From Rebecca billardiae RCC1528 (Eukaryota; Protista; Haptophyta): DNA of 64,000 nt. Position 1 is the first letter of the stretch, and each line of letters begins with the position of its first letter. Positions 11,018 to 38,075 of the stretch are shown one piece after another. Under the pieces are notes generated by a model, which was given only the letters and a program-made list of their open reading frames with translations, did not search any database and was not told the DNA's origin. Position numbers and translations under genes: made by a program. The DNA lies in NCBI GenBank assembly GCA_965240325.2, contig OZ251228.1, forward strand, positions 2,852,001 to 2,916,000. Direction: 5' to 3'.

Positions 11018-12710
11018 ATGATGGCCGTCGAGCACAGCAGCGTCGAGCGCGAGGCCGAGAGGCTGCTCGAGGAGATCACCAACCTGGAGGGCGACGGCTG
11101 GCACAGCGACGAGCAGTGGCGCGCCGCGCGCTGGGGCGCCCCGTCCGGCGGCAGCCTCGGCGCCGCGCCCGAGCTGGGGCCGCGCGCGTCCGCCGTCTCG
11201 CACAGCTCGGACGGCTCCGCGCCCGCGGGCGTGCGGCTGTACGAGCAGGCGCGCGAGAAGGCGGTGCGCAAGGTGCGTGCTGCGCCGCGGCTGCCGCGTG
11301 CGACCGCGCGCGCGCACGGCCGCGCGGCAGTGCTGCGCGCGCACGGCACCTCACGTGTGCGCGCGCGCGCGGTCGCGCTGCGCTGCGCCGCCGCGCCCAC
11401 AGGCGGCGGAGCGCGAGCGCACGGAGCAGACGGGCGCGGACGAGCTGCGGGCGAGGCCGTCGATCAACCCCATCTCGCACACCCTCGGCGCCAGCGCGCG
11501 CGGCGACGTCGGCGCGCGGCTGTACGAGGACGCGCGCGCGCTCGCGGCGAGGCGCGCGCGCGCGGCCGAGGCGCGCGCGCGCGAGGTGGAGGACAAGGAG
11601 AACGGCGGGGCGTACGCGGGCGTGCCGCTGACGAACCCGCTGCCCGCCGAGCTCGCCGCCGAGCGCGCGAGCCAGGGCGACGTAAGCGAGCGCCTCTACC
11701 GCCACGCGCACGAGCTCGAGGCGCGGCGCGAGGCGCGCGCGCGCGCGGACGCGGCCGCGAGCGCCGGCCGCGGCGCGGGCGCGCGGCCCGTCGTGAGCGC
11801 GGGGAGCGAGCGGCTGGTGCGCTCGATGGAGCGCTCGGGCCCGGCGAACGAGCGGCTGTACGACGAGAGCGCGCGCGCGCGCGAGCGCGACGCCGCGCGC
11901 GCGGCTGCGCGGCAGGCCGAGGAGGCGCGCGCGCACGCGCCCGCCATCGACGCCCACAGCGCGCGGCTCGTGCAGCGGCTCGAGCGGTCCGGCCGTTTCC
12001 TGCCGGACGTGCAGGAGCGGCTGGCGCGGCCAAAGGGCGGCGCGCGTGATGAGCCGAGCGGCGTGCACGCCGACCCGTCCGCCGCCTCCTCCGCCCACGC
12101 CGCGCCGCAGCCGCCCGAGGCGTCGCACCAGCCCGCGATCTCGGACCGATCTCGGCGGCTCGTGCAGCGCGCGCGCTCGGCCGCCGCCGCCGCCGCCGCC
12201 GAGCTGGGCGAGCGCGGGTACGGCGGCGGGGCGAGCGCGGCGGTGCTCGCGCCGACGGTCGAGGAGCGCCTCCTCGCCGCCGGCTCCGAGCGCGCCGCGC
12301 GCGAGGCCGCGCGCGCCGCCGCCGAGGCGGCGGCCGCGGCCGAGGCGGCGCGTCCGCGCGTGAACGCAAACTCGGAGCGCATCGCCGCGGCGGCGCGGCG
12401 GCAGGCCGCGGCGGAGGGCGGCGGCGCGGCGCGCGCGCGCGGGCCGAGCGCGGCGACGCGCGCGAGCCTGAGCGCCGAGCTCGACGAGCTCACGCACCGC
12501 CCCGCCCTCTCCGCCCTCTCCCGCCGGCTGGTGCTGCGCATGGGCCGCGCGGGCGCCGTCGAGGATCGGCTGATCGGCGCGGCGGCCGCGGCGAGCCGGG
12601 CGCGCGAGCGCGCGGGGCCGGTGCACGACCCGCTGGTGTTCGGGCCGCCGGGCGGGCCGGAGGCGGTGGCGAGGGCGCAGAGCGACGGCGCGGCCGCGTT
12701 CCGCGCGCTC

Positions 12711-12751
<41 letters not shown>

Positions 12752-14488
12752 CCAGCGGCGCGCCGCGAGCGGTGCCAGGCCGGCGCGCGCGCCGCACGCG
12801 CCGCCGCCGCCTCCACCGCCTCCGCCGGGCACAGCGGGCGCGGGCGCGGGCGCGAGCGGCGCGTCGGCCGCGCTGCTGCACTCACCCACCCTGCTCCACG
12901 CCGCCGGCGCGCTGGCCTCGCCCGGCGCGCACGCGCGCGCCGCGCGCGCGCCGCCGCCGCCGCCGGCCGCCTCCTCGCCCGGCGCCGCGCGCCGCGTCTC
13001 GCGCACGCCCTACCACCACCTGCGGCCGAGCCCGCCACGGCCGGGCGGTGCGGGCGCGGGCGAGGGCGCGTGGTCGGTGGGCTCGGCGCCGCCCTCGCCC
13101 GCGCGCCGCGCGTGGCACCCCGCCGCCGCCGCCGACTCCGAAGGTTCCGACGAAGGTTCCGACGAAGGTTCCGACGAAGGTTCCGACGAAGGTTCCGACG
13201 AAGGTTCCGAGACGCGCCGCGGCTCGGCGGGCACGGCTGAGACAGAGGAGGGCTCGGAGGCGGGCTCGGAGGCGGGCGGTGCAGGGCTCGGCGGGCGCGC
13301 GCGCGAGGGCGGGGCGTCGCCCTCCTCGGCGGGCCATGTGCGCGCGCGCGCGCGCGACGCCGAGGAGCGCCGATGGGCCGGCTCCGCCTCGGCGCTCAAG
13401 GCGGCGCCGGCGGCAGCGGCCGGCGCAGGCGGACGCGGCGCGCAGCAGGGCGGTGGCGGCGGCGCGGCGGCGGTGGCGCCAGCGCCCGGCGCGGGCGGCG
13501 CGGCGGGCGTGATCGCCTCGCGCATCCCCACGCGCCAAGCCGCAGCCGGCGCCACCCCAGCCTCCACCCGCCGGGCCTCGCCAGCCGCCGCGTCGTCGCT
13601 ACCGAGCTCGCCCGTGCGCGCCGGGCGCGCGCGCGGCGCGGCCGGCGGCGCGGCCGGCGCCCCCGGCGGCTCTGTGGGCGGGGGCGCGCGCTTTGTCGAC
13701 CTCAGGGCGGCCGCCGAGCAGGCTGCGCCGAGGCCAGCCGACGCCGTGCCCCGCTCGGCGCGTGCGCAGGACGACGAGCGCGATCCGTTCCCCCGCCGCC
13801 AAGCGCTCCTGTCGGCTGACGACTCGGCTGACTACGCTGGCGCGGCCGACGCGCCGCCCGGCCGCGCGGCCGCGGGCGATGAGCAGCGCCCTGAGCGCCC
13901 TGAGCGCCCTGAGCGCTGGGCGGTGCAGGAGGCGGCCGGCCAGCGCGACGGCGGGCGGGATGCGCTGGCGCCGCCGCCGGAAGCGTCACCCGCGGCGGCC
14001 GGGGAGCGGCGTGTCGCCGCCGCCGGCCGCGCGCCCCCTCCGCCCGCCTCGCCACCCGCCGGTGATGCGGGGCGCGCCCTGGGTGGCCAGATCGGCGTGG
14101 ATGCCGCTGCGGCCGCCGGGGCAGCGGCCGGCGAGGTGGCGGACGAGGCGGCGCGCCCCGGAGCTGGCCCCGCGCGCGCCGAGGGCGCCCGCTCGCCCGC
14201 CTCATGCTCGCCTCAGCCCCGGCCAGGCGCGGAGCACGCGGCTGCCGGCGAGGCTGCAGCTGCTGCCGGCGCCGGCCGCGCTGGCTCGGCGGGCGGCGGC
14301 GCCGCGGCCGCCGCCCAGCTCGCAGCCTCGGAGGACTCGGAAGGGTGTGGGGCGGCGTCGCCCGCTGCCTCCGCTGGTGGGTTCCCCGGGGTGTCGCCCT
14401 CCGCTGCATCCGACTGGCTGCTTGGCGCGCTGGAGCAGCGACTGAGCCCGCCGCCGCGTGAGCAGCAGCAGCAGCCGCAGCAGCAGCC

Positions 14489-14533
<45 letters not shown>

Positions 14534-14635
14534 GCCGCAGCAGCCGCAGCAGCCGCAGCAGCAGCAGCAGCAGCAGCAGCAGCCGCAGCAGCAGCAGCCG
14601 CAGCAGCAGCAGCCGCCGCAGCAGCCGCAGCAGCC

Positions 14636-14674
<39 letters not shown>

Positions 14675-17622
14675 GGCGGCGCGCGATGAGCGTCCGCGCG
14701 CCGACGCTGCCGAGGCACAGCGCGCGGCGGTGCCGGCCGCTCCGAGCGGCCGCGCGGAGGGCGAGGCGGAGCACGCCGCCGCGCGCGCTCCGACGAGCCG
14801 CGCCGACGCTGACGCTTCCGACGCCCCGGCCGCCGGCGCGGCCAGAGCGCGCGCCGCGCCGAGCTCGGGGTCGGCCGAGCGCGGCCCGCCCGGCAGCGGC
14901 GCCGCGCCCACGCCCCGCCGGCGCGCCAAGCTGCTGCACGCGGAGCTGGAGGAGGCGGTGGGGCTGCTCGAGGCGCAGGAGGCGGCGCTGGGGCAGACGG
15001 CGGCGCACAGGGAGCGCGCGGAGCGGGCGGCGCGGCGCGCGCGCGAGGACGCCGAGGCGGCCGAGGCGCGCGCGGCGGCGGCCGAGCGCGCGCTCGCGGC
15101 CGCGCGCTGCGAGGCGGACGCGCACGCGGCGCGCGCGGCCGAGGCGGTGGGCTCGCTCGAGCGCGCGGTGCAGAGCCGCGCGGAGGGCGCGAGCGCCGCC
15201 GCGGCGGGGCTGCGCGCGCAGCTCGAGCGAGCGCGCGCCGAGGCCGCGCAGCTGCGCGAGCGCTGCGCCGCGCTCGAGCGCACAGGCGCGCCAGACTCGA
15301 GCGCGCGCGCAGCCGCTCGCGCGCGCGGCCGCGCGCCCGGCTCGCCGCGTGCGGCCGCGGCGGACGAGGCGGCGGGCGGCGGCGGCGGGCGCGCGCCGCG
15401 GGCGGCGGAGCGCGCGGCGCAGGCGCATGGCGCGGCGCGCGAAGACGGGCCGTGGCCTCGTCGCGAGGGCGGCGGCCGGGACGGCAGCAGCGCACCGCCG
15501 CCGCCGCAGCCGCAGCCGCCGCCGCGCGAGGCGCCGAGCCGCGCCCTCGGCGGCCCGCACGCGCACGCGCACGCGCAGCCGCCGCAGCCGCAGCAGCCGC
15601 AGCCGCAGCCGCTGCATGGCGCCGCCGGGCCGTGGGCGCGAGCGCGTGCGGAGGCGGCGCGCTCGCCGCCGAGGCTGCGCGACGGCGCCGCGCGCGGAGG
15701 CGGCGCGGCGGAGCCTCGAGGCGCGCGCGAGGGGCACCCAGCCGCGCGTGCGGCCGCGGCGGCGCAAGGCTGGGGCGGCGCTTTGCCGGAGGGGGCAGCA
15801 GGATCGGACGCGGCCGCGCGCGCAGCGGCGCGTGCGGAGGCGGAGGGCGAGGTTGTGTATGCGGTGCGCGCGCACGCCGCAGCGCGGGCGCGCGCCCTCC
15901 GCGCGCGCGCGCGCTCGCTCTCGGCCGTGCGCCGCGCGCGAGGCTGCCGCGAGGCTGCCGCGCGGCGCGCTCACTCGCGCGCCCGCACTCCGCGCCCCGC
16001 GCACGGCACCGCGCCGCACCGCGCGGCGCGCACCGCGCGCGCAGGCACGCAGGGTGGCGGCGCCCCCTGCGCAGCCGGCTGCGCGCACGCCGGGGCCGGC
16101 GGACGCGGAGGCGTGGCGGCAGCGGCAGCGGCAGCACTCCGACACGCGCGCGCCCTCGGAGCAGCACGACCGCCGCCACCACCACCAACACCAACGCGCA
16201 CACGCGCCGTGGGCCGATGTGCCGCGCGGCAGCCTCGGCCCGAGCCCCGCTCGCGCGCAGCAGCAGCAGCAGCAGCAGCAGCAGCTGCACGCGGCCCCGG
16301 GCGGCGCGCACGCGCACGCGGGGCGAGGGCCGGGCGGCGGGGAGCCCGAGCGCTCCCCCGACGGGCGGCACCCGCCGCCATCCCGCGCCGACGCGGCGGA
16401 GTGGCGGCGCCACGCGCCGCAGCCGAGGCACAGCGGCCGAGACGACTCGGCCTCGCCGCAGGCCGCGCACGGCCGCGCGCCGGCCGCGCGCCGCGGCGGC
16501 GCGTGGGAGGGCGCGCGCGGCCCGGCCGCTCCGAGCAGCCCCGCGTCGAGCGACGCCTCGTGGGCCTCGGCCGAGCGGGCGCACGCCGGCGGCCGCGGCC
16601 GCGCGTGGCCGGACGGCCGCGCGTCGCACGGCCGGCCGCGGCGCAGCAGGGAGGGCGGAGGCGGCGGCACGCGGCACGCGCGCGCCGCGCGCTCGCGCTC
16701 GCCTCGGCGCGCGCTCGTGCCGTCCGAGCTGGGCGGCGCGCTCGTGCCTGCGTCCGCGCTGCTGCACTCGGAGAACGCGGCGCTGGCCGAGCGGCTGCGC
16801 GCGCTCGAGGAGGCGGAGCTGGGGCGCAGGCTGGCCCTCGCGCACGGCCTCGCGCGCGCGCGCCCACGCGCCCGGCGCGCGCGCGAGCGGCAGTGGCAGC
16901 GGCCGCCCTCCGCCTCCGCCTCAGCCTCAGCCTCAGCCTCCGCCTCCGCCTCAGAGACGGAGGCGGAGACGGAGGAGGAGGAGGAGCGCTGGGCGCACTC
17001 GCGGCCGCACCGCCACGCGCGCCGCCCGTCGGTGCCGCCGTACGAACACGCCACGCGAGCGCGCGCCTCCTCCAGCTCGCGCGCCGAGCGGCGCCCCCGC
17101 CCACACCGCCCCCACCGCCACGCCGAGCGGCCGGCCGCGCCGCACCGGCGGCCGGCGGGTGCGGAGGCGCCGTCCTCGGCCCGCGCCCAGTGGCAGCCTC
17201 GCGGCGCGCACGACCCGCGCCCTCGGCGGCGTGATGACGACACGACCGACGAGGAGGCCGAAGCCCACGACAGGCATGGCCGCCGCCGCCGCCGCCGCTC
17301 CGCCGCCGCCGCGCGGCACGATGCCGACGAGTCAGAGACAGAGTCAGAGTCAGAGTCCGGAGGCAGACGGCGCTGGGCCGAGGGTGGGCGCCACGTGCAC
17401 GCGGCCGACGCGCGCGGCTACGGCGATGGTGGCGGCGCGGCTTCATCCGGGGGTCGCCACGTCGGTCGCACCTACAGCCATCGCATCAGCGCCCGCGATG
17501 TCGATCACCGCGACGAGGACGACGACTATCGCCATGGCGTCGGTCACGTTCACGTTGATGGTGTCTCGTCGGGTGAGTTCGACGACGGACGACGACGGCC
17601 CTACGTCGACGACTACCGATGA
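11018..17622 (+). CDS. Large low-complexity protein with repeated 'RLY(E/D)' and 'P.I...S.RL' motifs, polyQ and coiled coil; introns ~11273-11402 and 15864-16044
   Basis: ORFs 10940, 11277 and 14458 join in frame at GT/AG sites. Repeated VRLYEQA, ARLYEDA, ERLYRHA, ERLYDES and RPSINPIS, PAIDAHS, PAISDRS motifs, a pattern seen in protist cytoskeletal/flagellar repeat proteins. Confidence 0.7.
13140..13210 (+). repeat. 12-bp coding minisatellite (gaaggttccgac) x~6, encoding EGSD
   Basis: Read directly from the sequence. Confidence 0.95.
14463..14675 (+). repeat. CAG/CCG trinucleotide tract encoding ~70 residues of poly-Q/P
   Basis: Read directly from the sequence; in frame with ORF 11277..17234. 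Confidence 0.95.
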
Positions 17623-18338
17623 CCACGGCAACGCCATTGAACTGTGAAGGCTCGTGCGCGTGAGAAGGCGCGCCGCAGCGGCCGCGGGGGCGCCGCAGTC
17701 GCAAGGTCGTCGGGTAGTCGGCTCGGAATCTCGGAATCTCGGATCAGGATTCAGGATGACTTAGACTATGAGTGAGGGCTCGAATTTCGACTAGATGGCT
17801 CGGATGCGGCCGCGCCATCACTTTGATTATATAGTCGCGTGTCGACGCGATGACAGACCCTCAACGATCATCGATAGATCCGCCACGATCGATACGACGC
17901 GCGATGATTCAATTGACGATGCATCAGCATCATGACTTGAATCATGTGAGCATGCCCATGCCCATCGGGCATCATGCCATGGCCGATGGCGCGCGCGGCG
18001 TCGTCGTCATCAATGACCGCGCCCATCATGATGTACGCGCCGCGGGCATCACCGCGCATCAGAGAGAGAGAGAGATACACACATCTGATGTGCAGCACCC
18101 GACGCACAAGGCACATGTGACATGACCGCAGTGGCGCAGTTGGGCGGATACCCTTTCGCGTCGCAAGGTGACGCGCGAGAGGCCGGTCGCCGCGGCCGAG
18201 CGGCGTGGCTGTGCCGCCTACATGCTGGGCGCCCATGGACTTGACTTCGCCGCGCGCGCTGAGGCTGGCGGGCGTCGCGATCGTTAACGACACAGGTACA
18301 GGGGGGTCCAGATGGTGGGCCCCACTTTGGCGGTGGCT

Positions 18339-19424
18339 GGCCAGGTAGTGCGGCACGTCCGTGCCTCTGGACGGGCATTGAGCGGTGGCGAGGTCGCCAA
18401 ATGGCGTGGCGTGGTCCCAGACAAGGTTGTTACTAGTCCTGATCAGCTCGCTAGCCATGTCGGTCGATGATCGCCTCGCCGTTGACAGGCGCGCACACGC
18501 TGCACACGTATTCGCACGGTAGCCGTGTCGGACGGCGGTCGCACGACTACCGCGCAGTCAACATTGATCGTCAGACTCGCGGTGTGTTGGGTCAGACGGA
18601 ACATTGACTGGTCTGCACCGTCGCAAGGCAGACCAAAAAGGTCGGCATGGCCGTCGGAACAGTGATCCTGGTCCCTGCTTCCCATTCTTCCCATGCGCAG
18701 CCTCACGCGCGCGCCGGTCGCACGAGGACGTGGACGTGGACGTGAGTGAGAGTGGTCGAAAAGTCGGAAAGGAAGCTGTCACTCATGCCCATGCGCTCGT
18801 ACGACCGCACCAACCTGCCTACGCCACGCCCCGGTGACCCGGCCGTGGCGCTGGGGCCTTCGAGCAGCGCACGCGCAGCAGATGGTCGCAATGCTCACAG
18901 CGGTAGCCGAGCGTCGGCGAGAGGCCGTCGGGCACGAAGTCGTCGCCGCTGAGCACGTAGCTGCCGGACTCACCGCACGCTTCGCACGTGAGGTGCTGCA
19001 CCATGTCCTCTTCCAGCATCTCCATGCTCATGAGGACATTGCCGCGCGGCCCGGCGTTGCGCTTCTCCTCAATCTCAGCAGCTGCCTTGGCCTCGTGGAC
19101 GTGGGAGTTGTGCTTGCTGGGTGGGCTGAACATGGCGTCGTAGTTGAAGCGCACCGGCGAGACATGCTCGCGATGCGGGCGCTCGATTCTGCATCGCGAG
19201 AGGAGGTTCGCCCTCCGCGTGCCGGCCGCACTTGCAGCTGCGCCAGCCGACGCCGGCGGCGGTGCCGCCGGCGGCGGCGTCGACGCTCCAGCCTCCTGCT
19301 CGCCGAGCCCACGTTCGAGCATCCGATCGATGCGCTTGCCGGGATTCGCATGCCTCTCCAGCGTCGCGACGTGTGCGACTTTGCGCCTACGTCGCGCCTC
19401 GTTGAACGCCGCGATGCTCGGCAT
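18339..19424 (-). pseudogene. Degenerate Mutator-like transposase (N-terminal zinc ribbon to first catalytic Asp region), frameshifted
   Basis: HLTCEACG...GLSPTLGYRCEHC zinc ribbon, then RLVRSYERMGMSDSFLSDFSTTL, then LTINVDCA..HGYRANT..VNGEAIID in shifting frames. Order and content match the Mutator-like transposase pattern CxxC..GL..CxxC..N.R.V....G.G...F....(I/V).VDG.W..R.GY.S..G......GK.LD. Confidence 0.6.
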
Positions 19425-19549
19425 CGCTGGCGCACGTGCTTGCGGCCGCGTTTGAACCCGGCCTCCCGCGCCCGGCCCGACTACCGAGTGATGCAGTTCG
19501 GAGCCGCTGCGCCAGCCGGACCCCGACGAATTCCCAGACGACAACCTTA

Positions 19550-21148
19550 ATGAGCCGCAAGCGTGATCACGCCGGATGCACCACGCGGCCTCACTTCGGC
19601 GTGGCAGGTGACGGGCGCGCCAGCCGGTGCGCTGCGCACAAGCTGGACGGCATGGTTGACGTGAGGAGCCCAAAGTGTGATTACGAGGGCTGCACCAAGG
19701 GGCCTTACTTCGGCATGCCAGGCGACGCGCGCGCCAGCCGGTGCGCCACGCACAAGCTGGCCGGCATGGTCGACGTGAGGAGCCTCAAGTGTGATCACAC
19801 CGGCTGCACCACGCAGCCTTCGTTCGGCATGCCGGGCGACGCGCGCGCCAGCCGGTGCGCTACGCACAAGCTAGCCGGCATGGTCGACGTGAAGAGCCGC
19901 CAGTGTGATCACGCCGGCTGCACCAAGCAGCCTGCGTTCGGCATGCCAGGTGACGCGCGCGCCAGCCGGTGTGCTGCGCACAAGCTGGCCGGCATGGTCG
20001 ACGTGAGGCACCCCAAGTGTGATCACGCTGGCTGCACCACGCAGCCTGCGTTCGGCATGCCGGGCGACGCGCGCCCCAGCCGGTGCGCTGCGCACAAGCT
20101 GGCCGGCATGGTCGACGTGAGGAGCCCAAAGTGTGATCACGCGGGCTGCACCAAGGGGCCTTCGTTCGGCATGCCGGGCGACGCGCGCGCCAGTCGGTGC
20201 GCTACGCACAAGCTGGCCGGCATGGTCGACGTGAAGCACCCCAAGTGTGATCACACAGGCTGCACCAAGGTGCCTTCGTTCGGCATGCCGGGCGACGCGC
20301 GCGCTAGCCGGTGCGCTGCGCACAAGCTGGCCGGCATGGTCGACGTGAAGAGCCGCAAGTGTGACCACACCGGCTGCACCACGGTGCCTGCGTTCGGCAT
20401 GCCGGGCGACGCGCGCGCCAGCCGGTGTGCTACGCACAAGCTGGCCGGCATGGTATGCAGTCGGCTCGCCGCCCCCAAGGGCAGGCTGGGGCATGGTGCC
20501 GGCGACCAGGGCACGCGCGCCGCGAGGCGATACAAACGCAGCAGCCGCATTGCGGCTGTCTCGGACGCTGCGCCGCGGCTGCCCGCACCCACGCCGCTGG
20601 TCGCAGTCAGCATCGTCCGCTGGCGCGCGCCAGATGGCACGATCCATTCGGTTGATGACGGGGTGGTCAATGATGGTGCCCTGGGCCTGGACCAGCGGCA
20701 TCTGTGTGGCAACGCAGGTGGCGATGCAATCCGGGCTGCCAGTGGCATCTACGAGCAGGGACTACTAGCAGGCATCAACACCACCGCTGCGCCAGGACTA
20801 CCATCATCATCGATGGCAGCGGCGGGAGCACGACGACAGCAACCACAAATCGTACCTGTGGTGATGGCGAGGAGGGCCTGGGTCGATGCTGGCGGCTGCT
20901 CAGAAGCGCGTCACAGCTCCGGAGTCTCCAGGCTCGAAAGAGGCAACGAGGCGGTGAGTTGCCGAATGCCACCACACGGCGGTGTCGGTGACGCAGACAC
21001 CGAATCTGACTACGACCGTTGGACCGTGATGTCGCATGCGATCTGCCGTCGTCGTCGTCGTCTTAGCGTAGTGGTAGTACATATATATATATATATATAT
21101 ATGCGGTATAGCAGTTATATACTCATCACTATAGCAGTTACTATATGA
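19550..21148 (+). CDS. EsV-1-7 cysteine-rich repeat protein, 8 x 38-aa repeats (array ~19556-20455); true 3' end uncertain because the ORF runs into (TA)n
   Basis: Repeat KCDHxGCTxxPxFGMPGDARASRCAxHKLAGMVDVxxx is C-x4-C-x16-C-x2-H, matching the EsV-1-7 motif; 114-bp tandem DNA unit. Confidence 0.85.
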   Translation: MSRKRDHAGCTTRPHFGVAGDGRASRCAAHKLDGMVDVRSPKCDYEGCTKGPYFGMPGDARASRCATHKLAGMVDVRSLKCDHTGCTTQPSFGMPGDARASRCATHKLAGMVDVKSRQCDHAGCTKQPAFGMPGDARASRCAAHKLAGMVDVRHPKCDHAGCTTQPAFGMPGDARPSRCAAHKLAGMVDVRSPKCDHAGCTKGPSFGMPGDARASRCATHKLAGMVDVKHPKCDHTGCTKVPSFGMPGDARASRCAAHKLAGMVDVKSRKCDHTGCTTVPAFGMPGDARASRCATHKLAGMVCSRLAAPKGRLGHGAGDQGTRAARRYKRSSRIAAVSDAAPRLPAPTPLVAVSIVRWRAPDGTIHSVDDGVVNDGALGLDQRHLCGNAGGDAIRAASGIYEQGLLAGINTTAAPGLPSSSMAAAGARRQQPQIVPVVMARRAWVDAGGCSEARHSSGVSRLERGNEAVSCRMPPHGGVGDADTESDYDRWTVMSHAICRRRRRLSVVVVHIYIYIYMRYSSYILITIAVTI

Positions 21149-21598
21149 TCATCATAATCTCAGTCTCATTCAGAGCATGCGCATGCATATATATATATGT
21201 CTAGCCACTCCGCCATGCCCGGCTCGTACAAGGCGTCGGGTACGAATGGACTCTGGAGCTGGATGGTCGCGGCGCGCGGCGTCGTGGAGTAGACAGACCA
21301 CAATGATCAATCATGGAACGATCAGGTTAGCTATGTTGGGATTTGAGCAACGAACGACAGCAGGCGCTGGCAGCGGCGTGGCGGTTGAGCTGCTGCCCGA
21401 GGTCGAGAGGGCGCCCGCGAGTCCCGTTTATAAGTTGGAGCGGGCGTCCAAGTAGTCGTTGATGAATCCCGTTTAGAAATAGAAGAGACGAGGACTGCGC
21501 GGCCGCGCGCGCACGATCGATCGCGACGCGCGGCGAGCAGACACGCGTCAGAGTGCGCCGCACCCGCGCGACGCACGGGCGCGAGGCGAGCGCGTATC

Positions 21599-22068
21599 TC
21601 AAACGATGAAGCGTGCGGGTTGACGCGACAGCGGCGAGAGCAAGAGACCATTGCATGAGGGGCGACGCGGCGAAGACAGATGATGACGTCGCGCCGCCGA
21701 ACGATCAGGCGGGGAGCCGGGCCACACAGACAGCCAGCGACCTTACCGAGCAGAGGGGCTGCGGCGACTGCGGTGCACCTCCTGCAGCGGAGCGTGCACC
21801 CGGCAGTGCCCGATGCAGGCGATTCCCTTGCCCAGCTCGGCGCCTTCGTCGTGAGCAGCCCCATGGCGCCCCCGAGAGCGAAGCCTGATCGATCCGATGT
21901 GAGCGGTAACCAACCGAGTCCTGCAGGTGCGCCGCTGTGGGCCAGATTGGCAGCGCACCAGGACTCCTGCGCGCGGCGGTGCGCACAGGACAACGCAGGA
22001 ATGCCGTGCGAGCCGGATTCTTGGCGTCGCTCATAGACACTCAGTTATAGGTTCCCTATAACGCCACA
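21599..22068 (+). mobile_element. Right-end fragment of a TA-targeting TIR element; near-identical to 39158-39630
   Basis: ORFs 21613..21888 and 39172..39447 translate identically. Both copies end cagttataggttccctataacgccaca followed by (TA)n. Confidence 0.85.
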
Positions 22069-22352
22069 TATATATATATCAAATATATATATATATATAT
22101 TATTGGTCCGCGGCGCCCGGCAGAATAAACTAATGCGCGCCAGCAGTGGCGGCCGCCGGCCGCGTCAGGCACGCTCTACGGCTCCTGCTGATCGGATGGC
22201 AAGACGACGAGACTAGAGAGTGGCACGACTACTGAGAGTGAGACGTAGTACTACGCACTACGTCACTACGTGAGTCCGTGACTACTAGTACTACGACGAG
22301 CAGCAAGCGCTTAGCACCGAGCACTGGCAGGCTGCTCGCAGCAGGCCGCTCG

Positions 22353-23832
22353 TCAGCGCTGGCAGACGACGGCGTACTCGAGCGTGGCCCCGTTGAAGAC
22401 GGGCGGCGCGTCGAACCACGCGCCGAACTCGCCCATCGCGGCGAGGCCCTCGCCCGTGTCGCCGTAGCGCGTGCCGTCGTCCGGCTCGCCGCCCTCGTCC
22501 CAGTTGGTGTATGTGAGCTCGGAGCCGTCCGCCCAGTGCCAGCCGCCGTCGGGCTCGGCGGCGCCGCGCGACTGCTCGAGCCCGATCCACACGTTCAGCC
22601 GGAACCGCTCGAGGCAGCGCACGAGGCTGTTCGCCGAGGGCACGCTCGGGCTGACCACGTGCGCGCCGTGCGCCGCGCACGCCGCCTGCGCGGCCGCGTA
22701 CGAGGCGGAGACACCGAGCGGCCGGTACGCCACGTCGTGCAGCAGCACCCAGCCGTCGCGGTCGGTGGGCAGCGCGTCCACCAGGGCGGAGCACGCGTTG
22801 CACGCGCGCTGCGCGCGCCACGAGAGCGCGGCGACCGCGAGGAAGATCAGCGCGTAGTACAGCGCGATCAGCGCGGCCATCGTGCCGACGCGCTGCAGCG
22901 TCGGCCGCAGCCCTTCCTCCTCACTCAGCGCGTACACGGGCGCGTCCGCGCCCTTGAGCCGGCGCGTGAGGAGCGCGTGCACGTGCCGGCCGCCGAAGAG
23001 GTTGAAGAGCAGCCCGCACACGTGCACCGCCGCCCAGTACACGTTGTCCGAGCCCACCTCCCCCGTGAACCCCCAGAGCGCCAGCAGGGCGTACAGAAAC
23101 ATGAGCGACAGCACCACCTGCAAGGAGAGCAGCGCGCGCCGCAGCTCGCGCGTGACCTCGGGCGCGGTGAGGTCGTCGATGCCGCACATGCCGCGCACGG
23201 CGACGACGAGCATGTACAGCGCGGAGAGGCCCACGCTCGTGATGATCACCCAGAACTGCGCGCACGCCGCGCGCGCGGCGCGCCCCCCGCGCGTCACGCG
23301 CCAAACCGCGCGCACGCGCGCGCGCGTGCGCGCGCGGTGCGCGCACGGTGGGGAACAGCGCCCAGATCACGGTGCGGCTCGCGCACGACTGGTCGATGCG
23401 CTGCGACTCGAGCCGCGAGACGATCACGTCGGGCGCGAGCAGGCCGACGGTCGTGATCGCGGCCGTGAGGTACAGGCACACGCTCAGCACAGCCAGCGCC
23501 ATGCTGTCGGTGGGCGCCGCGGCGAGCCAGAAGACGACGAAGCTGAGGAAGTACACGCCGCCGAACCCCTCGAACGAGAACGGCATCGGCGCGAAGAACG
23601 TGCCGATCAGGCCGCCGCTCATCATGAAGAAGGCGATGATGCTGAGCACGATCACGAACGGCGCCCAGGGGTCGCGCAGGTCGCACGCGTCGATGAGGCT
23701 GGGGACGCGCCGACGCGAGGGCCTCGTGCGCGAGCTCGTGCGCGCGGCGCCCGGCGAGTCCTGCTCCGCCTCGTGAGGCGGCTGGCCGCCTCCCGACCTG
23801 TCGAGCGACGGGGCGGCCTTTGGCGGCGCCAT
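22353..23832 (-). CDS. Multi-pass (~7 TM) membrane protein with C-terminal C-type lectin domain; intron ~23256-23346
   Basis: Seven hydrophobic segments followed by SYAAAQAACAAHGAHV...VWIGL...WHWADGSELTYTNWDEGGEPDD...GAWFD...AVVCQR, a canonical CTLD signature. Confidence 0.85.
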
Positions 23833-24136
23833 ATCTCCGGCCGCACGGCCACGACCACTTGGTTCACCACGCAGAGCGAGCCGGGTGAAGAAGTACTACT
23901 GTTGACGAAGGACGAACTATATGGGGGTACGGATGATTTCACGGTCATTTGGACCAGGACTTTACACCGGTACAGCAGCACAATCACTGCAATGTCACCT
24001 CCGAGCCCGCAACAGCAGCCGCGGCCGCCACGGCGACGCAGGCGGCGAGAAGGTTCTCAGGGCGCGGGCAGCATGCGCGGCGTCAACGCCGGCACGCGCG
24101 CTCCCGTCCCGCGGGCGAAGCCGCAGCCTCGACAGC

Positions 24137-24730
24137 CTACTTCTTGCCGAAGAGGAAGTCGAACGGGCCGGGCTTCTTGCCGCCCGGAGCCTGCTTCTTC
24201 TCCTCGCCCTTCGCCTTCTTGGCCGGCTTCTCCTCCACCCAGCCCATGTCCACGTACGGCAGGCGCAGGTCGAAGCGCTCGCCGTTGTCGAACTTGCCGC
24301 CCACGCCGAACTCGCCGCCCACGCCGAAGCTCGCCATCGGCAGCGGGATGCCGCCCTTCTGCTGGTCCTCGTACCCGAGCTTCTTCACCTTGCCGGTCGC
24401 GCGCCGCTTCTTGAACTCGTCGAGCTTGTTGAAGCCGGCGGAGTCCTCGCGCTTCTGCCAGGCGAGCTTGTCGATCCACTTGTCCGTCTCTTGCTCGCGC
24501 CTCTTCTCCGTGTCCTTGAAGTACTGCTCCCTCGCCCTCGGGTTGCGCCGGCGCGCGAGGATGGCCTGCTGCGCCTCGTACGCCTCGTCGATGGCGCGCT
24601 GCTGTGCAGCGCTCTTGCCGAAGATCATCACGTGCGACGCGCGCGCCACACTGGCGTCGCGCGCGAGCGCCGTGCGCATGCCGCCGGGGCAGAACGCGTG
24701 CGCCCCCACGAGCATCAACGAGAGCATCAT
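24137..24730 (-). CDS. Probable plastid-targeted algal protein of unknown function
   Basis: Signal peptide ending AHA-F, then an R/A/S-rich transit-like stretch. Strong coding bias; distinctive C-terminal motif GIPLPMASFGVGGEFGVGGKFDNGERFDLRLPYVDMGWV. Confidence 0.8.
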   Translation of the reverse strand: MMLSLMLVGAHAFCPGGMRTALARDASVARASHVMIFGKSAAQQRAIDEAYEAQQAILARRRNPRAREQYFKDTEKRREQETDKWIDKLAWQKREDSAGFNKLDEFKKRRATGKVKKLGYEDQQKGGIPLPMASFGVGGEFGVGGKFDNGERFDLRLPYVDMGWVEEKPAKKAKGEEKKQAPGGKKPGPFDFLFGKK

Positions 24731-24888
24731 GCTGACGACTTCGATGCGCGCGCTCAGGCCGCCCTGCCTGATCAAGAGCGGCTTCCGATCCCCAAGATTC
24801 CGCGCCCGTTGCCCCTTTCTGCTTCGTTTCTCACAGCGGCAGCTACAGTTTACTATGATTTAACGTGCACACTAGGTTAAGGCGTGAT

Positions 24889-27053
24889 TAGGCCCTGGCT
24901 GATTGAGACCCAGCCGTTTCATCTCCGCGACGTCGATTTTCTGGCGACGCCGCGGAGCGGCTGGCACTTTCCAGTAGCGGCGGCTCTACAGCTCAGAGGC
25001 CGCCATCGTGCCGATGGCGAAGCGGCGCACGAAGCGGAACCTCGTCGAGCGAAGCCCCTCGCACGGAGGCGCGGGGGGCGCCAATGACGGCGCGCGCGCC
25101 GCCGCCGCGAATCGGAGCGGTCCGGATGGGTCTGGGCCGGCTGTCTCGCCTGGTGCGCGCCGCGTGCGCGCCGCGCTCACCGCACGCGCGCTGCTTGTTT
25201 GCACCCGGGTGGTTTTGGGCGCGACGGGCACATGTCGGGCAACAACAGCCGTATGACACACTTGGACACACTTTGACGCGTTGGGGGGGCTGGTGGGGGT
25301 CATGCTTGACACGGCCCATGTGGCACCTTTTTGGTTCTCTTTGGTTCTCGGCCGCAATCCGTCATCGCACTCACGCTGTGCGCATCTGGCCGCTCCCGTT
25401 ACGCCCCGCCGTCCGCGCACGCCAGGCGAGCTGGTGAGTGTCCTCAGCAGTTCAACGTGCACCAGTCCCATCTACTAGAATGGGCCGGGTGGAGCCCTCA
25501 TGGCAGCCTTTTCGCCAGATGAGTAGCATGCGCGCAGCGTTCACCGCGCAAGCATTGCGTTCGTTGCCACCCGGGATGGCTTGGCGGTTGCGACGGGCAC
25601 ATCGGTCGGGCGACAACAGCCGTATGACACACTTGGACACACTTTGACGCGCTGGGAGGGCTGGTGGGGGTCATACTTGACACGGCCCATGTGAAACCGG
25701 CTTGGTTTTGTTTGGTTCTCGGCCGCAATCTGTCGTCTCACTCATGCGGTGCACATCTGGCCAGTCAAGTCGGTTGAGGTGCCCCCATCTCGGCGTGCGG
25801 AGGGCAAGTCGATGAGCAGCATTCAGCAGGTGGTGGCGCGCCTCCCCCGCACGCCGGCATAGTAACCCCAGCCGCGCTACCCGCCGTTGACAAGCACCCT
25901 CGCCACGAGGACTTAAACGACGACGGACGAGGACGATACCGATTACCGGCGCGCGCGCGAAGATGAGTTGGATGCTGTGACTGTGAGTGTGACAACAACA
26001 GAAGCTACTGTAACTTGCTCAGCTCGATGCCACCGTCCCGGGCGTCGTCACGTCGGCCTACGAAGTGACATCTCGGCCGCCGTCCCTGCGTTGGGCCTGC
26101 TGCAAGAGCCAGCGAACAGGTAGCTTATCTGCGAGTGCCGCCGCCGCGAGGCGGTGCCTTTCTTGCGCTCTCCGCGCGACAGTCGGAGACCATCAGCTTG
26201 GATGGGCCGGGCGAAGCCTCGTGCTCGGCGCTTACGCCGCTTACGCCGCATGGGTGCCATACTCACCGTGCTCACACGGCACGGCTTGGTTATGCGTCGA
26301 CACTGGTCAGTCTGAAGAGTGACGCCGGGACAGTGCCCCTATACTGCAGTGACTCGTGCAGCTGCGCGTTCTGCCGCTGCGGGTGCTACTGTCAGCTGAA
26401 CACGGCCTCGTGACACAGCAGGACGCACTCTGAGACTCTGAAGCATGGGAGTAGGCGAAGCTGCCAAAGCTCCACCTATCTGCTTCTGCCGTGAACACGA
26501 GGAGCAGCCTGTGCAGCTTGGGCTCTCTCGACGTTCGACGTGCAACATCATGAGCATCATTGCAGCAAGTGCCTCACTGGCGCGGACGGGACTCACGACG
26601 ATCGCGCGTTTGCACGGCCCTCGCATGGCAGCCTGACGCGACAACGTGCTGGCTATCTACTGAGCCTACTGGAGCCGTGATCGCTCGGCTCGCCGGCGCG
26701 CGTGTGTCCACAGGAGTGCTCAAGCCGGCGCAGCGGGCCGTGGTGCCGTGAGACTGAGCGTACATGATGCGGCGTGAGCTGGCGTGAGGCTGTCAACATG
26801 GGTGGCATCAGCACAGGTGACAGCGCAGACAGGGACGGAACGCGTTACAGTGCGGACGGCGGAGGCGTAGGCGCTCGCGGGGGCGGCGACAGCGCGAGGG
26901 CAGGAGCGGGGACGGCGCAGCAGGGCCGAGGCGCCATGCTGGCTCCGGTGCGGCGGGCTTGAAACGGCCGGCCGCTTTTACTGGAAAGCGCCCGCCGCTC
27001 CGCGCCAGCGCGGAGCTCGTCAGAAAAGGCGGGGTCTCAACCCGCCAGGATTA
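24889..27053 (+). mobile_element. Decayed TIR transposon, hAT-like
   Basis: Degenerate inverted ends: 24889-24985 (cctggctgattgagaccc...gcggagcggctggcactttccagta) versus 26965-27053 (tactggaaagcgcccgccgctccgcg...gggtctcaacccgccagga). Internal broken frames include GCHTHRAH (hAT CxxH-like) and EPTGAVIARLAGARVST. No TSD recognised. Confidence 0.5.
25176..25763 (+). repeat. Two ~220-bp diverged direct repeats (25176-25391 and 25541-25763), intron-like
   Basis: Both contain acaacagccgtatgacacacttggacacactttgacgcg and tttggttctcggccgcaatc...catctggcc. Confidence 0.9.
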
Positions 27054-30677: not shown

Positions 30678-30713
<36 letters not shown>

Positions 30714-32230: not shown

Positions 32231-32302
32231 CCTACGTATACTACTACACATTATCAGCAGACATCATCATCATCGTCAAATCGCGCGTCGTCGTCAATTA
32301 TT

Positions 32303-36043: not shown

Positions 36044-36047
<4 letters not shown>

Positions 36048-36111: not shown

Positions 36112-36113
<2 letters not shown>

Positions 36114-36316: not shown

Positions 36317-37405
36317 TCACCCCGTAGGCCGTACCCGCCTGGCCATCACCACGGGTCGTGCACGCGACGGCGTCGTTACGACGCTGGCTGTGACCAGCGG
36401 CGGCAGCTGCGACGGCCGCCGCGCTGCCACAACGTCCGAGGCAGTGGCTGTGCTGCTGGTGCGCTTCCGCTGTCGCTTGGCGGCGCTCACTTCTTTGGTG
36501 CTCACGACTTGCTCCAGCCCGCGCTTGTGCGCACAACTCCGACGGCGCTTCATACCGGCCAGCTTGTGCGTAGCGCACCGGCTGGCACGCGCATCGTCGG
36601 GCATGCCGAACGCAGGCCGCGTGGTGCAGCCGGTGTGATCGCACTTGGGGTTCCTCACGTCGACCATGCCGGCCAGCTTGTGCGGAGCGCACCGGCTGGC
36701 GCGCGCGTCGCCCGGCATGCCGAACGAAGGCAGGGTGGTGCAGCCGGTGTGATCACACTTGCGGCTCACCACATCGACCATGCCGGCCAGCTTGTGCGTA
36801 GCGCACCGGCTGGCGCGCGCGTCGCCCGGCATGCCGAAGTAAGGCACCTTGGTGCAGCCTGCGTGATCACACTTTGGGCTCCTCACGTCGACCATGCCAG
36901 CCAGCTTGTGCGTGGCGCACCGGCTGGCGCGTGCGTCACCCGGCATGCCGAACGAAGGCCCCTTGGTGCAGCCGGTGTGATCACACTTGGGGCTCCTCAC
37001 GTCGACCATGCCGGCCAGCTTGTGCGTAGCGCACCGGCTGGCGCGCGCGTCGCCCGGCATGCCGAACGAAGGCCGCGTGGTGCAGCCGGTGTGATCACAC
37101 TTGGGGTGCCTCGCGTCGACCATGCCGGCCAGCTTGTGCTCAGCACACCGGCTGGCGCGCGAGTCACCCGGCATGCCGAACGCAGGCACCTTGGTGCAGC
37201 CGGTGTGATCACACTTGCGGCTCTTCACGTCGACCATGCCGTCCAGCTTGTGCGCAGCGCACCGGCTGGCGCGCGAGTCGCCCGGCATGCCGAAGTGAGG
37301 CCGCGTGGTGCAGCCGGTGTGATCACACTTGCGGCTCTTCCGGTTGACCATGCCGGCCAGCTCGTTGCGCAGCCTCTTGGCGTGCTCTTGGTTGCCCTGC
37401 GCGTG
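36317..37405 (-). CDS. Second EsV-1-7 repeat protein, 7 x 38-aa repeats (array ~36551-37345); 5' end apparently interrupted at 37406
   Basis: Same C-x4-C-x16-C-x2-H repeat as the 19550 copy. Basic tail KRRRS..KRQRKR; shares PLV...S(I/V)V and PVVMARR with copy 1. Confidence 0.8.
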   Translation of the reverse strand, partial: HAQGNQEHAKRLRNELAGMVNRKSRKCDHTGCTTRPHFGMPGDSRASRCAAHKLDGMVDVKSRKCDHTGCTKVPAFGMPGDSRASRCAEHKLAGMVDARHPKCDHTGCTTRPSFGMPGDARASRCATHKLAGMVDVRSPKCDHTGCTKGPSFGMPGDARASRCATHKLAGMVDVRSPKCDHAGCTKVPYFGMPGDARASRCATHKLAGMVDVVSRKCDHTGCTTLPSFGMPGDARASRCAPHKLAGMVDVRNPKCDHTGCTTRPAFGMPDDARASRCATHKLAGMKRRRSCAHKRGLEQVVSTKEVSAAKRQRKRTSSTATASDVVAARRPSQLPPLVTASVVTTPSRARPVVMARRVRPTG

Positions 37406-37603: not shown

Positions 37604-38075
37604 TACGAGCATGTGGGCATGAGCGACAGCTTCCTTTCCGACTTTTCGACCACTCTCACGTCCACGTCCACGTCCTCGTGCGACCGGCGCGCGCGTGAGG
37701 CTGCGCATGGGAAGAATGGGAAGCAGGGACCAGGATCACTGTTCCAACGGCCATGCCGACCTTTTTGGTCTGCCTTGCGACGATGCAGGCCAGTCAATGT
37801 TCCGTCTGACCCAACACACCGCGAGTCTGACGATCAATGTTGACTGCGCGGTAGTCGTGCGACCGCCGTCCCACACTGTTGCCGGCCGCGTGCGAATACT
37901 CAGTGTGCAGCGTGTGCGCGCCTGTCAACAGCGAGGCGATCATCGACCGACATGGCTAGCGAGCTGATCAGGACTAGTAACAACCTTGCCTGGGACCACG
38001 CCACGCCATTTGGCGACCTCTCCACCGCGCTCAATGCCCGTCCAGAGGCACGGACGTGCCGCACTACTCCTGGCC
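37604..38075 (+). pseudogene. Second fragment of the Mutator-like transposase relic, an inverted homolog of 18339-18802
   Basis: ORFs 37695..37967(+) and 18443..18706(-) are near-identical; DNA identity is visible throughout. Confidence 0.75.

What the first reader, a model, noticed from the sequence alone, without database searches (positions are those of the whole stretch)
18339..20455. Mutator-like transposase paired head-to-head with a hypervariable zinc-finger repeat array: a candidate TALE/PRDM9-like reprogrammable binder on a transposon
Seen: the transposase relic ATG (19424, minus) and the EsV-1-7 gene ATG (19550, plus) are 125 bp apart, and the same divergent pairing recurs at 36317-38075. 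The 38-aa repeats vary little except at a triad after the second Cys (T-R-P-H, K-G-P-Y, T-Q-P-S, K-Q-P-A, T-Q-P-A, K-G-P-S, K-V-P-S, T-V-P-A) and at the 3-residue linker (RSP, RSL, KSR, RHP, KHP). The tail is basic and NLS-like. Established: EsV-1-7 repeats occur in algal giant viruses and in the brown-algal IMMEDIATE UPRIGHT family, with no molecular function known to me. Plant VANDAL Mutator elements carry sequence-specific anti-silencing proteins (VANC). Inference: this is a transposon-encoded modular nucleic-acid-binding array in which a few residues per finger set specificity, used for anti-silencing, targeting or self-recognition.
Basis: partly seen in the sequence, partly recalled or inferred. 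Interest (0 to 1): 0.9.

Follow-up and report, generated by a model that had tools for sequence, protein, structure and literature searches.

The report
EsV-1-7 zinc-repeat genes, no transposon
Two inverted paralogous genes encode arrays of 38-residue EsV-1-7 cysteine-rich repeats whose differences fall at a few fixed positions, as in the rest of the family, but the neighbouring ORF is an orphan zinc-ribbon ORF rather than a Mutator transposase, and nothing marks the locus as a transposon.

Summary
The repeat arrays are real. Copy 1 (19550-20458, +) has 8 repeats and copy 2 (37351-36545, -) has 7, and both match Pfam PF19114 very strongly. The 201-aa minus-strand ORF does start 125 bp from the copy-1 ATG.

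The ORF is not a transposase by any test run. It has no Pfam hit, and an exhaustive HMMER search of 1.84 billion proteins gave one spurious hit. It has no second copy in the window. No terminal inverted repeats were found, and none of the 20 best-coding other ORFs in the window has a transposase domain.

What recurs at copy 2 is a 460-bp non-coding segment (S) plus the array, which is an inverted segmental duplication among ordinary genes.

The variable-position claim holds and extends. Variation sits at positions 2-4, 9, 13, 14, 16 and 30. The same hot spots (16, 3, 14, 2, 29, 30) top the within-array variability of 32 independent homologues. At those pre-defined sites dN is 2-3 times dS, against about 0.3 elsewhere.

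A three-repeat AlphaFold model is confident (pLDDT 91) but matches no solved fold. The modular-binder idea stays plausible and untested.

The scan has noted such arrays about 47 times in this genome.

The parts
18339..18801 (.). S segment, copy 1: a 460-bp non-coding element shared with copy 2
   Evidence: 93.7% identical to the reverse complement of 37604-38075. The two copies differ by indels of 2, 3, 6 and 4 nt. Codon log-odds are negative in all six frames. No Pfam hit for any ORF in it. Further variants appear in run X1 contigs.
18819..19424 (-). ORF201: orphan ORF with a C-terminal CxxC...CxxC zinc-ribbon-like motif, present only beside copy 1
   Evidence: No Pfam family. No true homologue among 1.84e9 representatives. 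No second copy in the window. Its codon signature is coding-like: GC1/2/3 of 0.69/0.54/0.82 and +0.29 bits per codon, the only positive frame. The protein atlas gives only generic zinc-ribbon look-alikes. The single-sequence AF2 model has pLDDT 51.
19425..19549 (.). 125-bp spacer between the divergent ATGs
   Evidence: Read directly from the sequence.
19550..20458 (+). EsV-1-7 array, copy 1: 8 repeats of 38 aa, the first lacking Cys1
   Evidence: PF19114, 8 stretches, 367 bits. Repeat table. R for C at repeat 1 and AAG>ATG at the start. GC3 of 0.84 and +0.28 bits per codon.
20459..21148 (+). Open tail after array 1: basic at its start, without a coding signature
   Evidence: GC3 of 0.60 and negative codon log-odds. 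12 K/R in the first 60 residues. Only weak similarity to the copy-2 tail (73% over about 100 nt).
36545..37351 (-). EsV-1-7 array, copy 2: 7 intact repeats, probable start at the Met of MVNRKSRKC
   Evidence: PF19114, 7 stretches, 318 bits. Repeat table. 88-92% nt identity to copy 1 in several registers.
37352..37396 (-). Degenerate half repeat upstream of copy 2
   Evidence: tblastn with a repeat pair: 62% identity over residues 21-76.
36317..36544 (-). Tail of copy 2 with KRRR and KRQRKR clusters
   Evidence: Translation. Basic-residue count. Negative codon score.
37604..38075 (.). S segment, copy 2, inverted relative to copy 1

Best explanation
[quoted passage not shown] They lie in inverted orientation about 16 kb apart in an ordinary gene-dense chromosomal region of an unnamed high-GC eukaryote. 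The scan's notes call it an alga.

**The repeat.** Each 38-residue repeat carries the invariant ligand set C-x4-C-x16-C-x2-H. It is most likely a single zinc-binding module of a fold not represented among solved structures.

**How the arrays evolve (shown).**
- The arrays evolve in concert. Repeats are 80-95% identical at the DNA level within and between copies, and best matches between the copies are not collinear.
- Thirty of the 38 codons are under purifying selection (omega about 0.2-0.3).
- Amino-acid differences pile up at a few codons next to the metal ligands: positions 2-3, 9, 13/14/16 and 29/30.
- The same codons are the most variable within arrays across the whole family.

**Function (inferred, about 45%).** These positions form the ligand-contacting surface of each module, and the array reads an extended target modularly. 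Whether that target is DNA, RNA or protein is unknown.

**The neighbouring ORF.** The 201-aa divergent ORF beside copy 1 is not a transposase. It is most likely a lineage-specific small zinc-ribbon gene, or a recently acquired gene fragment, that sits where copy 2 has 257 bp of unrelated DNA. The shared 460-bp S segment is non-coding upstream DNA duplicated together with the array.

**Confidence.** The stated confidence of 0.7 applies to the anatomy and evolutionary pattern and to the locus not being a transposon. The binding mechanism itself is about 0.45.
For: **Family membership.** Pfam scores are 367 and 318 bits against a cut-off of 25. A homologue search found 506 proteins, including giant-virus-like contigs, Coccomyxa, Effrenium and Chrysoparadoxa. 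The only invariant columns in 108 three-repeat pieces are the C, C, C, H of each repeat.

**Concerted evolution.** 114-nt period with 84-92% identity in all registers. Nearest partners are non-collinear.

**Selection.** Omega is 0.2 at 30 sites. At hot-spot sets defined a priori from 32 independent homologues, dN/dS(global) is 2.0-3.2. Only 1-10 of 20000 random site sets reach the same pN. Window and family within-array variability profiles correlate (Spearman rho 0.60, p=8e-5).

**Fold.** The three-repeat AF2 model has pLDDT 91.

**Ordinary context.** Neighbouring ORFs carry C-type lectin, DUF6823, cNMP-binding, Pol III RPC2, NUDIX, CNOT11 and kinase domains. No transposase domain appears in the 20 best-coding other ORFs.

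**ORF201.** Coding-like codon usage but no homologue.

**S segment.** Non-coding.
Against: - No RNA run could be listed, so no gene model, start, intron or expression is verified.
- Omega>1 rests on non-independent pairwise counts over 8 or fewer codons. dS may be depressed by codon bias or GC-biased conversion (GC3 is 0.84).
- By the count of distinct amino-acid states alone the clustering would not be remarkable.
- No structural or sequence link to any protein of known binding function. The best Foldseek E against PDB is 2.8, the best VIA Z is 2.1, and the best Swiss-Prot model hit is E 0.15.
- Model coordinates could not be inspected, so the claim that hot spots share a surface is inferred only from their closeness in sequence to the ligands.
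- The rest of the genome could not be searched for further copies of ORF201 or S.
Confidence: 0.7

Rival explanations
1. The cassette is a Mutator-like transposon or its relic, whose transposase gene is paired head-to-head with an EsV-1-7 array. The array serves the element for anti-silencing, targeting or self-recognition.
For: - The head-to-head arrangement with a 125-bp spacer is real.
- A segment upstream (S) is repeated with the array and exists in further variants in run X1.
- There is a precedent for EsV-1-7 domains in mobile elements: the Ectocarpus TcMar-2_Ec32 transposase has an N-terminal EsV-1-7 domain (PMC12477816).
Against: - ORF201 has no transposase domain and no homologue at all.
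- It is absent from copy 2 and from the rest of the window.
- No TIRs were found around the unit.
- The flanks of the two S copies share no target-site duplication (read).
- No transposase domain in the 20 best-coding other ORFs of the window.
- Three homologues elsewhere sit beside viral or ordinary genes or other EsV genes.
- As an unchecked lead only: none of the 47 notes on EsV arrays indexed for this genome at the time mentions a transposase.
Confidence: 0.04
2. The variable positions are simply the least constrained surface residues of a structural zinc module. They carry no recognition code. The arrays act as scaffolds, as protein-protein interaction repeats of fixed function, or as dispensable virus-derived genes.
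For: - All local hot spots are high-entropy positions family-wide (2.2-3.2 bits).
- No similarity to any known nucleic-acid-binding fold.
- dS may be underestimated in a genome with GC3 of 0.84.
- The basic tail is not a family feature.
Against: - About 13 other positions are just as free family-wide (5, 7, 8, 12, 19, 20, 22-24, 26, 29, 33, 34) yet are frozen among the 15 local repeats.
- In 32 independent proteins the within-array diversity peaks at the same few codons.
- dN there exceeds dS 2-3 fold at sites chosen a priori.
- Homogenised arrays keep these differences.
Confidence: 0.35
3. ORF201 is not a gene. It is a chance open frame in GC-rich DNA, or the decayed remnant of something unrecognisable.
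For: - Long stop-free frames are common here, and the opposite strand is also open over the same 606 nt.
- There is no homologue anywhere and the protein is not in the public protein collections searched.
- AF2 gives pLDDT 51 with residues 56-139 disordered.
- X1 contigs give zero depth over it, though a hole in coverage proves nothing.
Against: - Only the ORF201 frame has a positive codon log-odds (+0.29 bits per codon, +0.45 in the C-terminal half). That equals the EsV array and is close to a held-out lectin gene.
- The GC1/2/3 pattern matches real genes.
- The four-Cys ribbon motif is intact.
Confidence: 0.25
4. The two inverted S copies are the long terminal inverted repeats of a giant (about 19.7 kb) element spanning 18339-38075.
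For: The S copies are inverted, 93.7% identical and sharply bounded at their outer ends.
Against: - The outer flanks share no target-site duplication.
- The interval carries ordinary cellular genes (lectin, DUF6823, cNMP-binding) and no transposase domain.
- The inverted homology also includes the arrays, as expected of an inverted segmental duplication.
Confidence: 0.03

Closest known systems
EsV-1-7 cysteine-rich repeat proteins (Pfam PF19114 / IPR043822), including Ectocarpus IMMEDIATE UPRIGHT and the EsV-1 gene 7 product
   Same: - Same repeat with the C-x4-C-x16-C-x2-H ligands, in tandem arrays of 5-10 units.
- Multigene families that tend to lie in clusters.
- Presence in algae and giant viruses (bioRxiv 10.1101/2024.02.19.579948).
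- No other Pfam domain in the protein, as reported for Ectocarpus (bioRxiv 10.64898/2026.04.27.720984).
   Different: - The host is an unnamed high-GC eukaryote rather than a brown alga. Its best RPC2 relatives are unnamed metagenomic proteins at 81-89% identity, and named taxa reach about 65%.
- The repeats are unusually homogenised: mean DNA identity is 88%, and amino-acid identity is above the 35-79% range of the homologues.
- There is no IMM-type N-terminal domain.
Ectocarpus TcMar-2_Ec32 transposon (Tc1/Mariner transposase with an N-terminal EsV-1-7 domain)
   Same: It shows that EsV-1-7 modules can be recruited by mobile elements, presumably as a binding domain (PMC12477816).
   Different: There the domain is fused to a recognisable DDE transposase inside an element with defined ends and MITE derivatives. 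Here there is no transposase, no fusion and no element ends.
PRDM9 / KRAB C2H2 zinc-finger arrays and TAL effector repeats (functional analogues only)
   Same: Tandem near-identical modules homogenised by concerted evolution, with differences focused on a few residues per module and dN>dS there.
   Different: - No sequence or fold relationship.
- No evidence of nucleic-acid binding.
- Hot spots flank the metal ligands rather than lying on a recognition helix (C2H2) or at a repeat-variable di-residue (TALE).
- No KRAB, SET or secretion/activation domains.
Mutator-like elements (MULE / VANDAL with VANC)
   Same: Only the superficial layout of two divergently oriented ORFs.
   Different: No MULE DDE domain, no SWIM or FAR1/WRKY-type zinc finger, no long TIRs and no TSD. 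The ORF occurs once in the window.

Membership tests
EsV-1-7 cysteine-rich repeat family (PF19114) | Match to the Pfam model above its gathering score | tested here: met
   367.3 and 317.6 bits against a cut-off of 25, in 8 and 7 stretches.
EsV-1-7 cysteine-rich repeat family (PF19114) | C-x4-C-x16-C-x2-H ligand pattern in each repeat | tested here: met
   Present in 14 of 15 repeats; repeat 1 of copy 1 has R for Cys1. These four columns are the only invariant ones in 108 aligned pieces.
EsV-1-7 cysteine-rich repeat family (PF19114) | Zinc binding by the repeat | not testable with these tools
   Inferred from the ligand pattern and a confident AF2 model (pLDDT 91). [quoted passage not shown]
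Mutator-like (MULE) transposon | MULE / Transposase_mut DDE transposase domain | tested here: not met
   No Pfam hit at E<=1 for ORF201 or for any ORF of the flanks. Exhaustive phmmer gave one spurious hit. The 20 best-coding other ORFs of the window have no transposase domain.
Mutator-like (MULE) transposon | Long terminal inverted repeats bounding the element | tested here: not met
   No inverted repeat of 20 nt or more within 17600-19560 or 20440-22400, the two stretches either side of the array, apart from (TA)n runs. The scan took each stretch separately, so an arm on one side pairing with an arm on the other was not sought. The only long inverted pair is S plus the array, which encloses cellular genes.
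Mutator-like (MULE) transposon | 8-11 bp target-site duplication | tested here: not met
   The outer flanks of the two S copies share no direct repeat (alignment). No other candidate ends exist.
Mutator-like (MULE) transposon | Multiple genomic copies of the transposase-bearing unit | tested here: inconclusive
   ORF201 occurs once in the 64-kb window. The rest of the genome could not be searched, and the sequence look-up in scan notes was blank, which means nothing.
VANDAL-type anti-silencing (VANC-like) | Homology to VANC or demonstrated sequence-specific demethylation of the element | not tested
   No VANC reference sequence was available from the tools. The EsV-1-7 array has no Pfam family other than PF19114.
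Programmable repeat binders (PRDM9-type ZF arrays, TALEs) - works-like, not membership | Near-identical tandem modules with variation focused at a few positions | tested here: met
   Entropy peaks at positions 14 (2.2 bits) and 16 (1.8), then 2 and 30 (1.5), 4, 9, 3 and 13. Twenty-three of 38 positions have at most 0.35 bits. The same hot spots appear in 32 homologues.
Programmable repeat binders (PRDM9-type ZF arrays, TALEs) - works-like, not membership | Positive or diversifying selection at those positions | tested here: inconclusive
   dN/dS is 2.0-3.2 at a-priori sites against about 0.3 elsewhere. Random site sets reach this in at most 10 of 20000 trials. The counts are pairwise, the sites are few and dS may be biased.
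Programmable repeat binders (PRDM9-type ZF arrays, TALEs) - works-like, not membership | Sequence-specific nucleic-acid binding with one module per target unit | not testable with these tools
   No fold match to a DNA- or RNA-binding domain. Needs experiments.

The most novel reading that the evidence does not exclude
EsV-1-7 arrays, here and throughout the family in algae and giant viruses, are a previously unrecognised class of modular zinc-module reader. A small set of residues beside the metal ligands (X14-Pro-X16, positions 2/3 and 29/30) would encode target specificity. Concerted evolution plus diversifying selection would then retune the arrays, as in PRDM9 or KRAB zinc-finger proteins.
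Probability: 0.25. Interest if true: 0.75.

Novelty: new member of a known kind. Interest (0 to 1): 0.35.

Why it matters
The molecular function of the EsV-1-7 domain is unknown. Yet the family is among the largest expansions in brown algae, includes the developmental regulator IMM, and is shared with giant viruses.

This analysis shows that within-array diversity is focused on the same few ligand-adjacent residues in 32 independent proteins as well as here. That gives a concrete, testable handle: which residues to swap, and what to expect.

The transposon link that made this particular locus look special does not hold. The locus is therefore one ordinary example of a family the scan has flagged many times in this genome.

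Tried and rejected
- **Mutator/MULE identity of ORF201.** Rejected by Pfam at E<=1, exhaustive phmmer and two protein-atlas look-ups. The single-sequence AF2 model was too poor (pLDDT 51) to use for a fold search.
- **Recurrence of the ORF at copy 2.** Rejected by tblastn and blastn with word size 7.
- **S as coding sequence.** Rejected by frame-breaking indels, absence of Pfam hits and negative codon scores.
- **S copies as TIRs of a giant element.** Rejected because there is no TSD and the content is cellular genes.
- **RNA evidence.** Two run searches listed no RNA run. The one run laid (X1, contigs only) covers S variants and arrays but not ORF201, which proves nothing.
- **Fold assignment.** Foldseek against PDB, VIA-align wide and Swiss-Prot AlphaFold models gave only weak generic zinc-module matches.
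- **Naming the organism.** The Pol III RPC2 gene has only unnamed metagenomic relatives at 81-89% identity, and named taxa reach about 65%.
- **RNA genes.** Rfam and tRNA scans of the window found nothing.
- **NLS-like tail as a family trait.** Rejected: 7 of 117 homologues have it, fewer than in shuffled controls.
- **Literature.** Macaisne et al. 2017 could not be read because it is not held.
Full report
**1. What is in the sequence**

The window is GC-rich (63-84% in 2-kb bins, apart from one microsatellite-rich bin at 50%) and eukaryotic in character. It contains split genes, microsatellites and ordinary cellular domains.

At 19550-20458 (+) an open frame encodes eight 38-residue repeats. 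At 37351-36545 (-) a second frame encodes seven. [quoted passage not shown]

The DNA period is 114 nt. Repeats are 84-92% identical in every register, within and between the two copies, with a mean pairwise identity of 88.5%.

A minus-strand ORF of 201 codons runs from 19424 to 18819. Its ATG lies 125 bp from the plus-strand ATG at 19550.

**2. The 'transposase relic'**

- ORF201 has no Pfam family at E<=1 other than sub-threshold zinc-ribbon noise.
- An exhaustive phmmer search of 1.84 billion cluster representatives returned one protein. It is a 1163-aa low-complexity repeat protein matched in ten short stretches, which is spurious.
- Language-model look-alikes are small bacterial zinc-ribbon proteins of no defined family.
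- A single-sequence AF2 model is poor (pLDDT 51). It shows two N-terminal helices, a disordered middle and short hairpins at the CxxC...CxxC end.

Nothing links this ORF to Mutator or any other transposase.

The ORF does look like coding sequence. Its GC1/2/3 values are 0.69/0.54/0.82, against 0.72/0.52/0.84 for the Pol III RPC2 gene. With a codon log-odds model trained on four window genes, it is the only one of six frames with a positive score. That score is +0.29 bits per codon, equal to the EsV array, compared with +0.47 for a held-out lectin ORF.

My reading is an orphan small zinc-ribbon gene or a recently captured gene fragment (about 60%), a chance ORF (about 25%), or a relic of something else (about 15%).

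**3. What recurs at the second locus**

Self-comparison shows that three things are repeated.

- **S.** A 460-bp segment at 18339-18801 matches 38075-37604 at 93.7%.
- **The arrays.** These are the two EsV-1-7 arrays described above.
- **R.** An unrelated direct repeat at 21595-22103 matches 39154-39666 at 98%.

ORF201 has no second copy in the window by tblastn.

Between S and the array, copy 1 has 740 bp, essentially ORF201. Copy 2 has 257 unrelated bp that include a degenerate half repeat.

S differs between the copies by indels of 2, 3, 6 and 4 nt. It has no Pfam-matching ORF and has negative codon scores in all frames, so it is non-coding.

Contigs of the one public run that holds this DNA (X1) include an exact 861-nt contig at 21199-21300. 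They show S in several further indel variants, so S is probably multi-copy in the species. They show no depth over ORF201, but a hole there proves nothing.

The 'same divergent pairing' is therefore not repeated. The picture is an inverted segmental duplication of upstream DNA plus array.

**4. Is it a transposon?**

- No inverted repeats of 20 nt or more lie within either stretch beside the copy-1 array, apart from (TA)n runs.
- The outer flanks of the two S copies share no target-site duplication.
- The 14 kb between the arrays and the rest of the window carry ordinary genes. These include C-type lectin, DUF6823, two cNMP-binding proteins, a kinase, Pol III RPC2 in several exons, NUDIX, CNOT11 and a WD40 protein.
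- No transposase domain appears in the 20 best-coding ORFs other than the EsV genes and ORF201.
- Three homologues whose contigs I fetched sit in other contexts. One is in a giant-virus-like contig next to ribonucleotide reductase, one is among ordinary Coccomyxa genes, and one is in a tandem cluster of six EsV genes in Effrenium. None has a transposase neighbour.
- When looked up, the scan's notes held 47 EsV-array notes for this genome, none mentioning a transposase. This is an unchecked lead, not evidence.

A real precedent for a transposon link exists, but in a different form. The Ectocarpus TcMar-2_Ec32 transposase carries an N-terminal EsV-1-7 domain fused to a recognisable transposase (PMC12477816).

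**5. The variable positions**

Numbering starts three residues before the lysine that precedes Cys1, which puts the ligands at C6, C11, C28 and H31.

Among the 15 repeats, entropy peaks at position 14 (R/V/G/Q/L, 2.2 bits) and position 16 (S/A/H/Y, 1.8 bits). Next come positions 2 and 30 (1.5), 4, 9, 3, 1 and 13. Twenty-three positions have 0.35 bits or less. Positions 9 and 30 were missed.

Family-wide, only the four ligands are invariant and Met36 is nearly so. About thirteen other positions are as free as the local hot spots across the family yet are frozen locally. The local pattern is therefore not just 'all unconstrained sites vary'.

The most informative test used 32 independent homologues with six or more canonical repeats. 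I computed within-protein, between-repeat entropy for each. The top ranks are positions 16, 3, 14, 2, 29, 30, 24 and 9. The profile correlates with the window's (rho 0.60, p=8e-5), and the homogenised arrays (>60% inter-repeat identity) show the same order.

I then used these a-priori site sets on the window's codons.

| Site set | dN / global dS |
|---|---|
| top 8 hot spots | 2.05 |
| top 6 hot spots | 2.4 |
| top 4 hot spots | 3.2 |
| remaining sites | about 0.3 |

Random site sets reach the observed pN in 1-10 of 20000 draws. Post-hoc sites give omega 2.0-2.1 against 0.2 elsewhere.

Several caveats apply. Pairwise counts are not independent. Few codons are involved. dS may be lowered by codon bias or GC-biased conversion in a genome with GC3 of 0.84.

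Nearest partners between the copies are not collinear, for example c1r2 with c2r5 and c1r4 with c2r2. They differ at codon 14 in four of the five closest pairs. That fits unequal exchange or conversion with retention of differences at the hot spots.

All hot spots lie within five residues of a metal ligand.

**6. Structure**

A three-repeat AF2 model built on 108 aligned pieces is confident (pLDDT 91, pTM 0.62). It consists of short strands and loops.

| Search | Best result |
|---|---|
| Foldseek against PDB | E 2.8 |
| VIA-align against 48,161 chains | Z 2.1 |
| Swiss-Prot AlphaFold models | E 0.15 (N-terminal stretch of Arabidopsis WRKY19), then RecO, LIM, AN1 and GATA zinc modules |

The module is a zinc-knuckle-type unit with no solved relative. 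No binding function can be read from the fold.

**7. Gene details**

- Copy 1 starts at an ATG created by AAG>ATG at linker position 2 of its first repeat. That repeat has lost Cys1 (TGT>CGT). Copy 1 therefore has seven intact modules plus a crippled one.
- Copy 2 most likely starts at the Met of the preceding degenerate repeat (MVNRKSRKC). That matches the usual family layout, with the first Cys within about ten residues of the start.
- Both tails begin with basic clusters. They lack a coding signature, share only weak similarity, and such clusters are rare in the family (7 of 117).
- Without RNA data the true C-termini are unknown.

**8. Comparison with what is known, and verdict**

This is a clear member of the EsV-1-7 family. 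The literature read here describes that family as follows:

- greatly expanded and tandemly clustered in brown algae;
- shared with giant viruses;
- possibly a new zinc-finger class;
- without a known molecular function.

The locus works like, but is unrelated to, PRDM9-type zinc-finger arrays or TALEs in its evolutionary pattern. It fails every tested defining feature of a Mutator-like element.

The organism could not be named. Its best RPC2 relatives are unnamed metagenomic proteins at 81-89% identity, and named taxa reach only about 65%.

The transposon claim should be dropped. The hypervariable-module observation is sound, applies across the family, and has already been noted many times in this genome by the scan. 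The recognition-code idea is worth testing but is not specific to this locus.

Noticed in passing
window 21595-22103 and 39154-39666: A 510-bp direct repeat (R, 98% identical), bordered on both sides by (TA)n and, in the second copy, (GA)n microsatellite runs that form 97% complementary inverted arms (39026-39158 and 39635-39767). It lies downstream of EsV copy 1 but upstream of copy 2 and in the opposite relative orientation, so it is independent of the EsV duplication. It may be a small dispersed element. It has no Rfam or tRNA match.
   Followed up: partly
window 18339-18801, via run X1: Contigs of the only public run holding this DNA show the S segment in several additional indel variants: 7- and 10-nt insertions and 41- and 129-nt skips. 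S is therefore probably a multi-copy upstream or dispersed sequence in this species.
   Followed up: partly
window 19547-19570: The copy-1 start codon is an AAG-to-ATG change at a linker position of the first repeat. That repeat has also lost its first cysteine (CGT for TGT), which looks like a truncated array given a new start.
   Followed up: yes
window 39987-44982 (-): An RNA polymerase III second-largest subunit (RPC2) gene is split over several ORFs. Domains 6-7 lie at 39987-41711 and domains 1-2 at 42142-44982. Its closest public relatives are unnamed metagenomic proteins (81-89% identity) and named taxa are about 65% identical, so the lineage is poorly sampled.
   Followed up: partly
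window 11277-17650: An 84%-GC stretch carries overlapping open frames of 1000-2000 codons on both strands, with long poly-Q/poly-P (CAG-type) and Ala/Arg/Gly-rich runs. Most of these frames must be artefacts of composition.
   Followed up: no
AF2 model of window 19661-20002: The best match among Swiss-Prot AlphaFold models is residues 88-162 of Arabidopsis WRKY19 (27% identity over 107 aligned residues, E 0.15, TM 0.22). It is too weak to call, but it is a lead for a related Cys-rich repeat in a plant immune-receptor fusion protein.
   Followed up: no
L003 (Effrenium voratum contig CAUJNA010003279.1, 181795-203988): Six consecutive same-strand EsV-1-7 genes form a tandem cluster in a dinoflagellate. 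This is outside the brown-algal and viral range usually discussed.
   Followed up: no
window 24140-24859 (-): An ORF with a strong DUF6823 match (E 2.7e-34) has the highest codon score per codon in the window. Its function is unknown.
   Followed up: no
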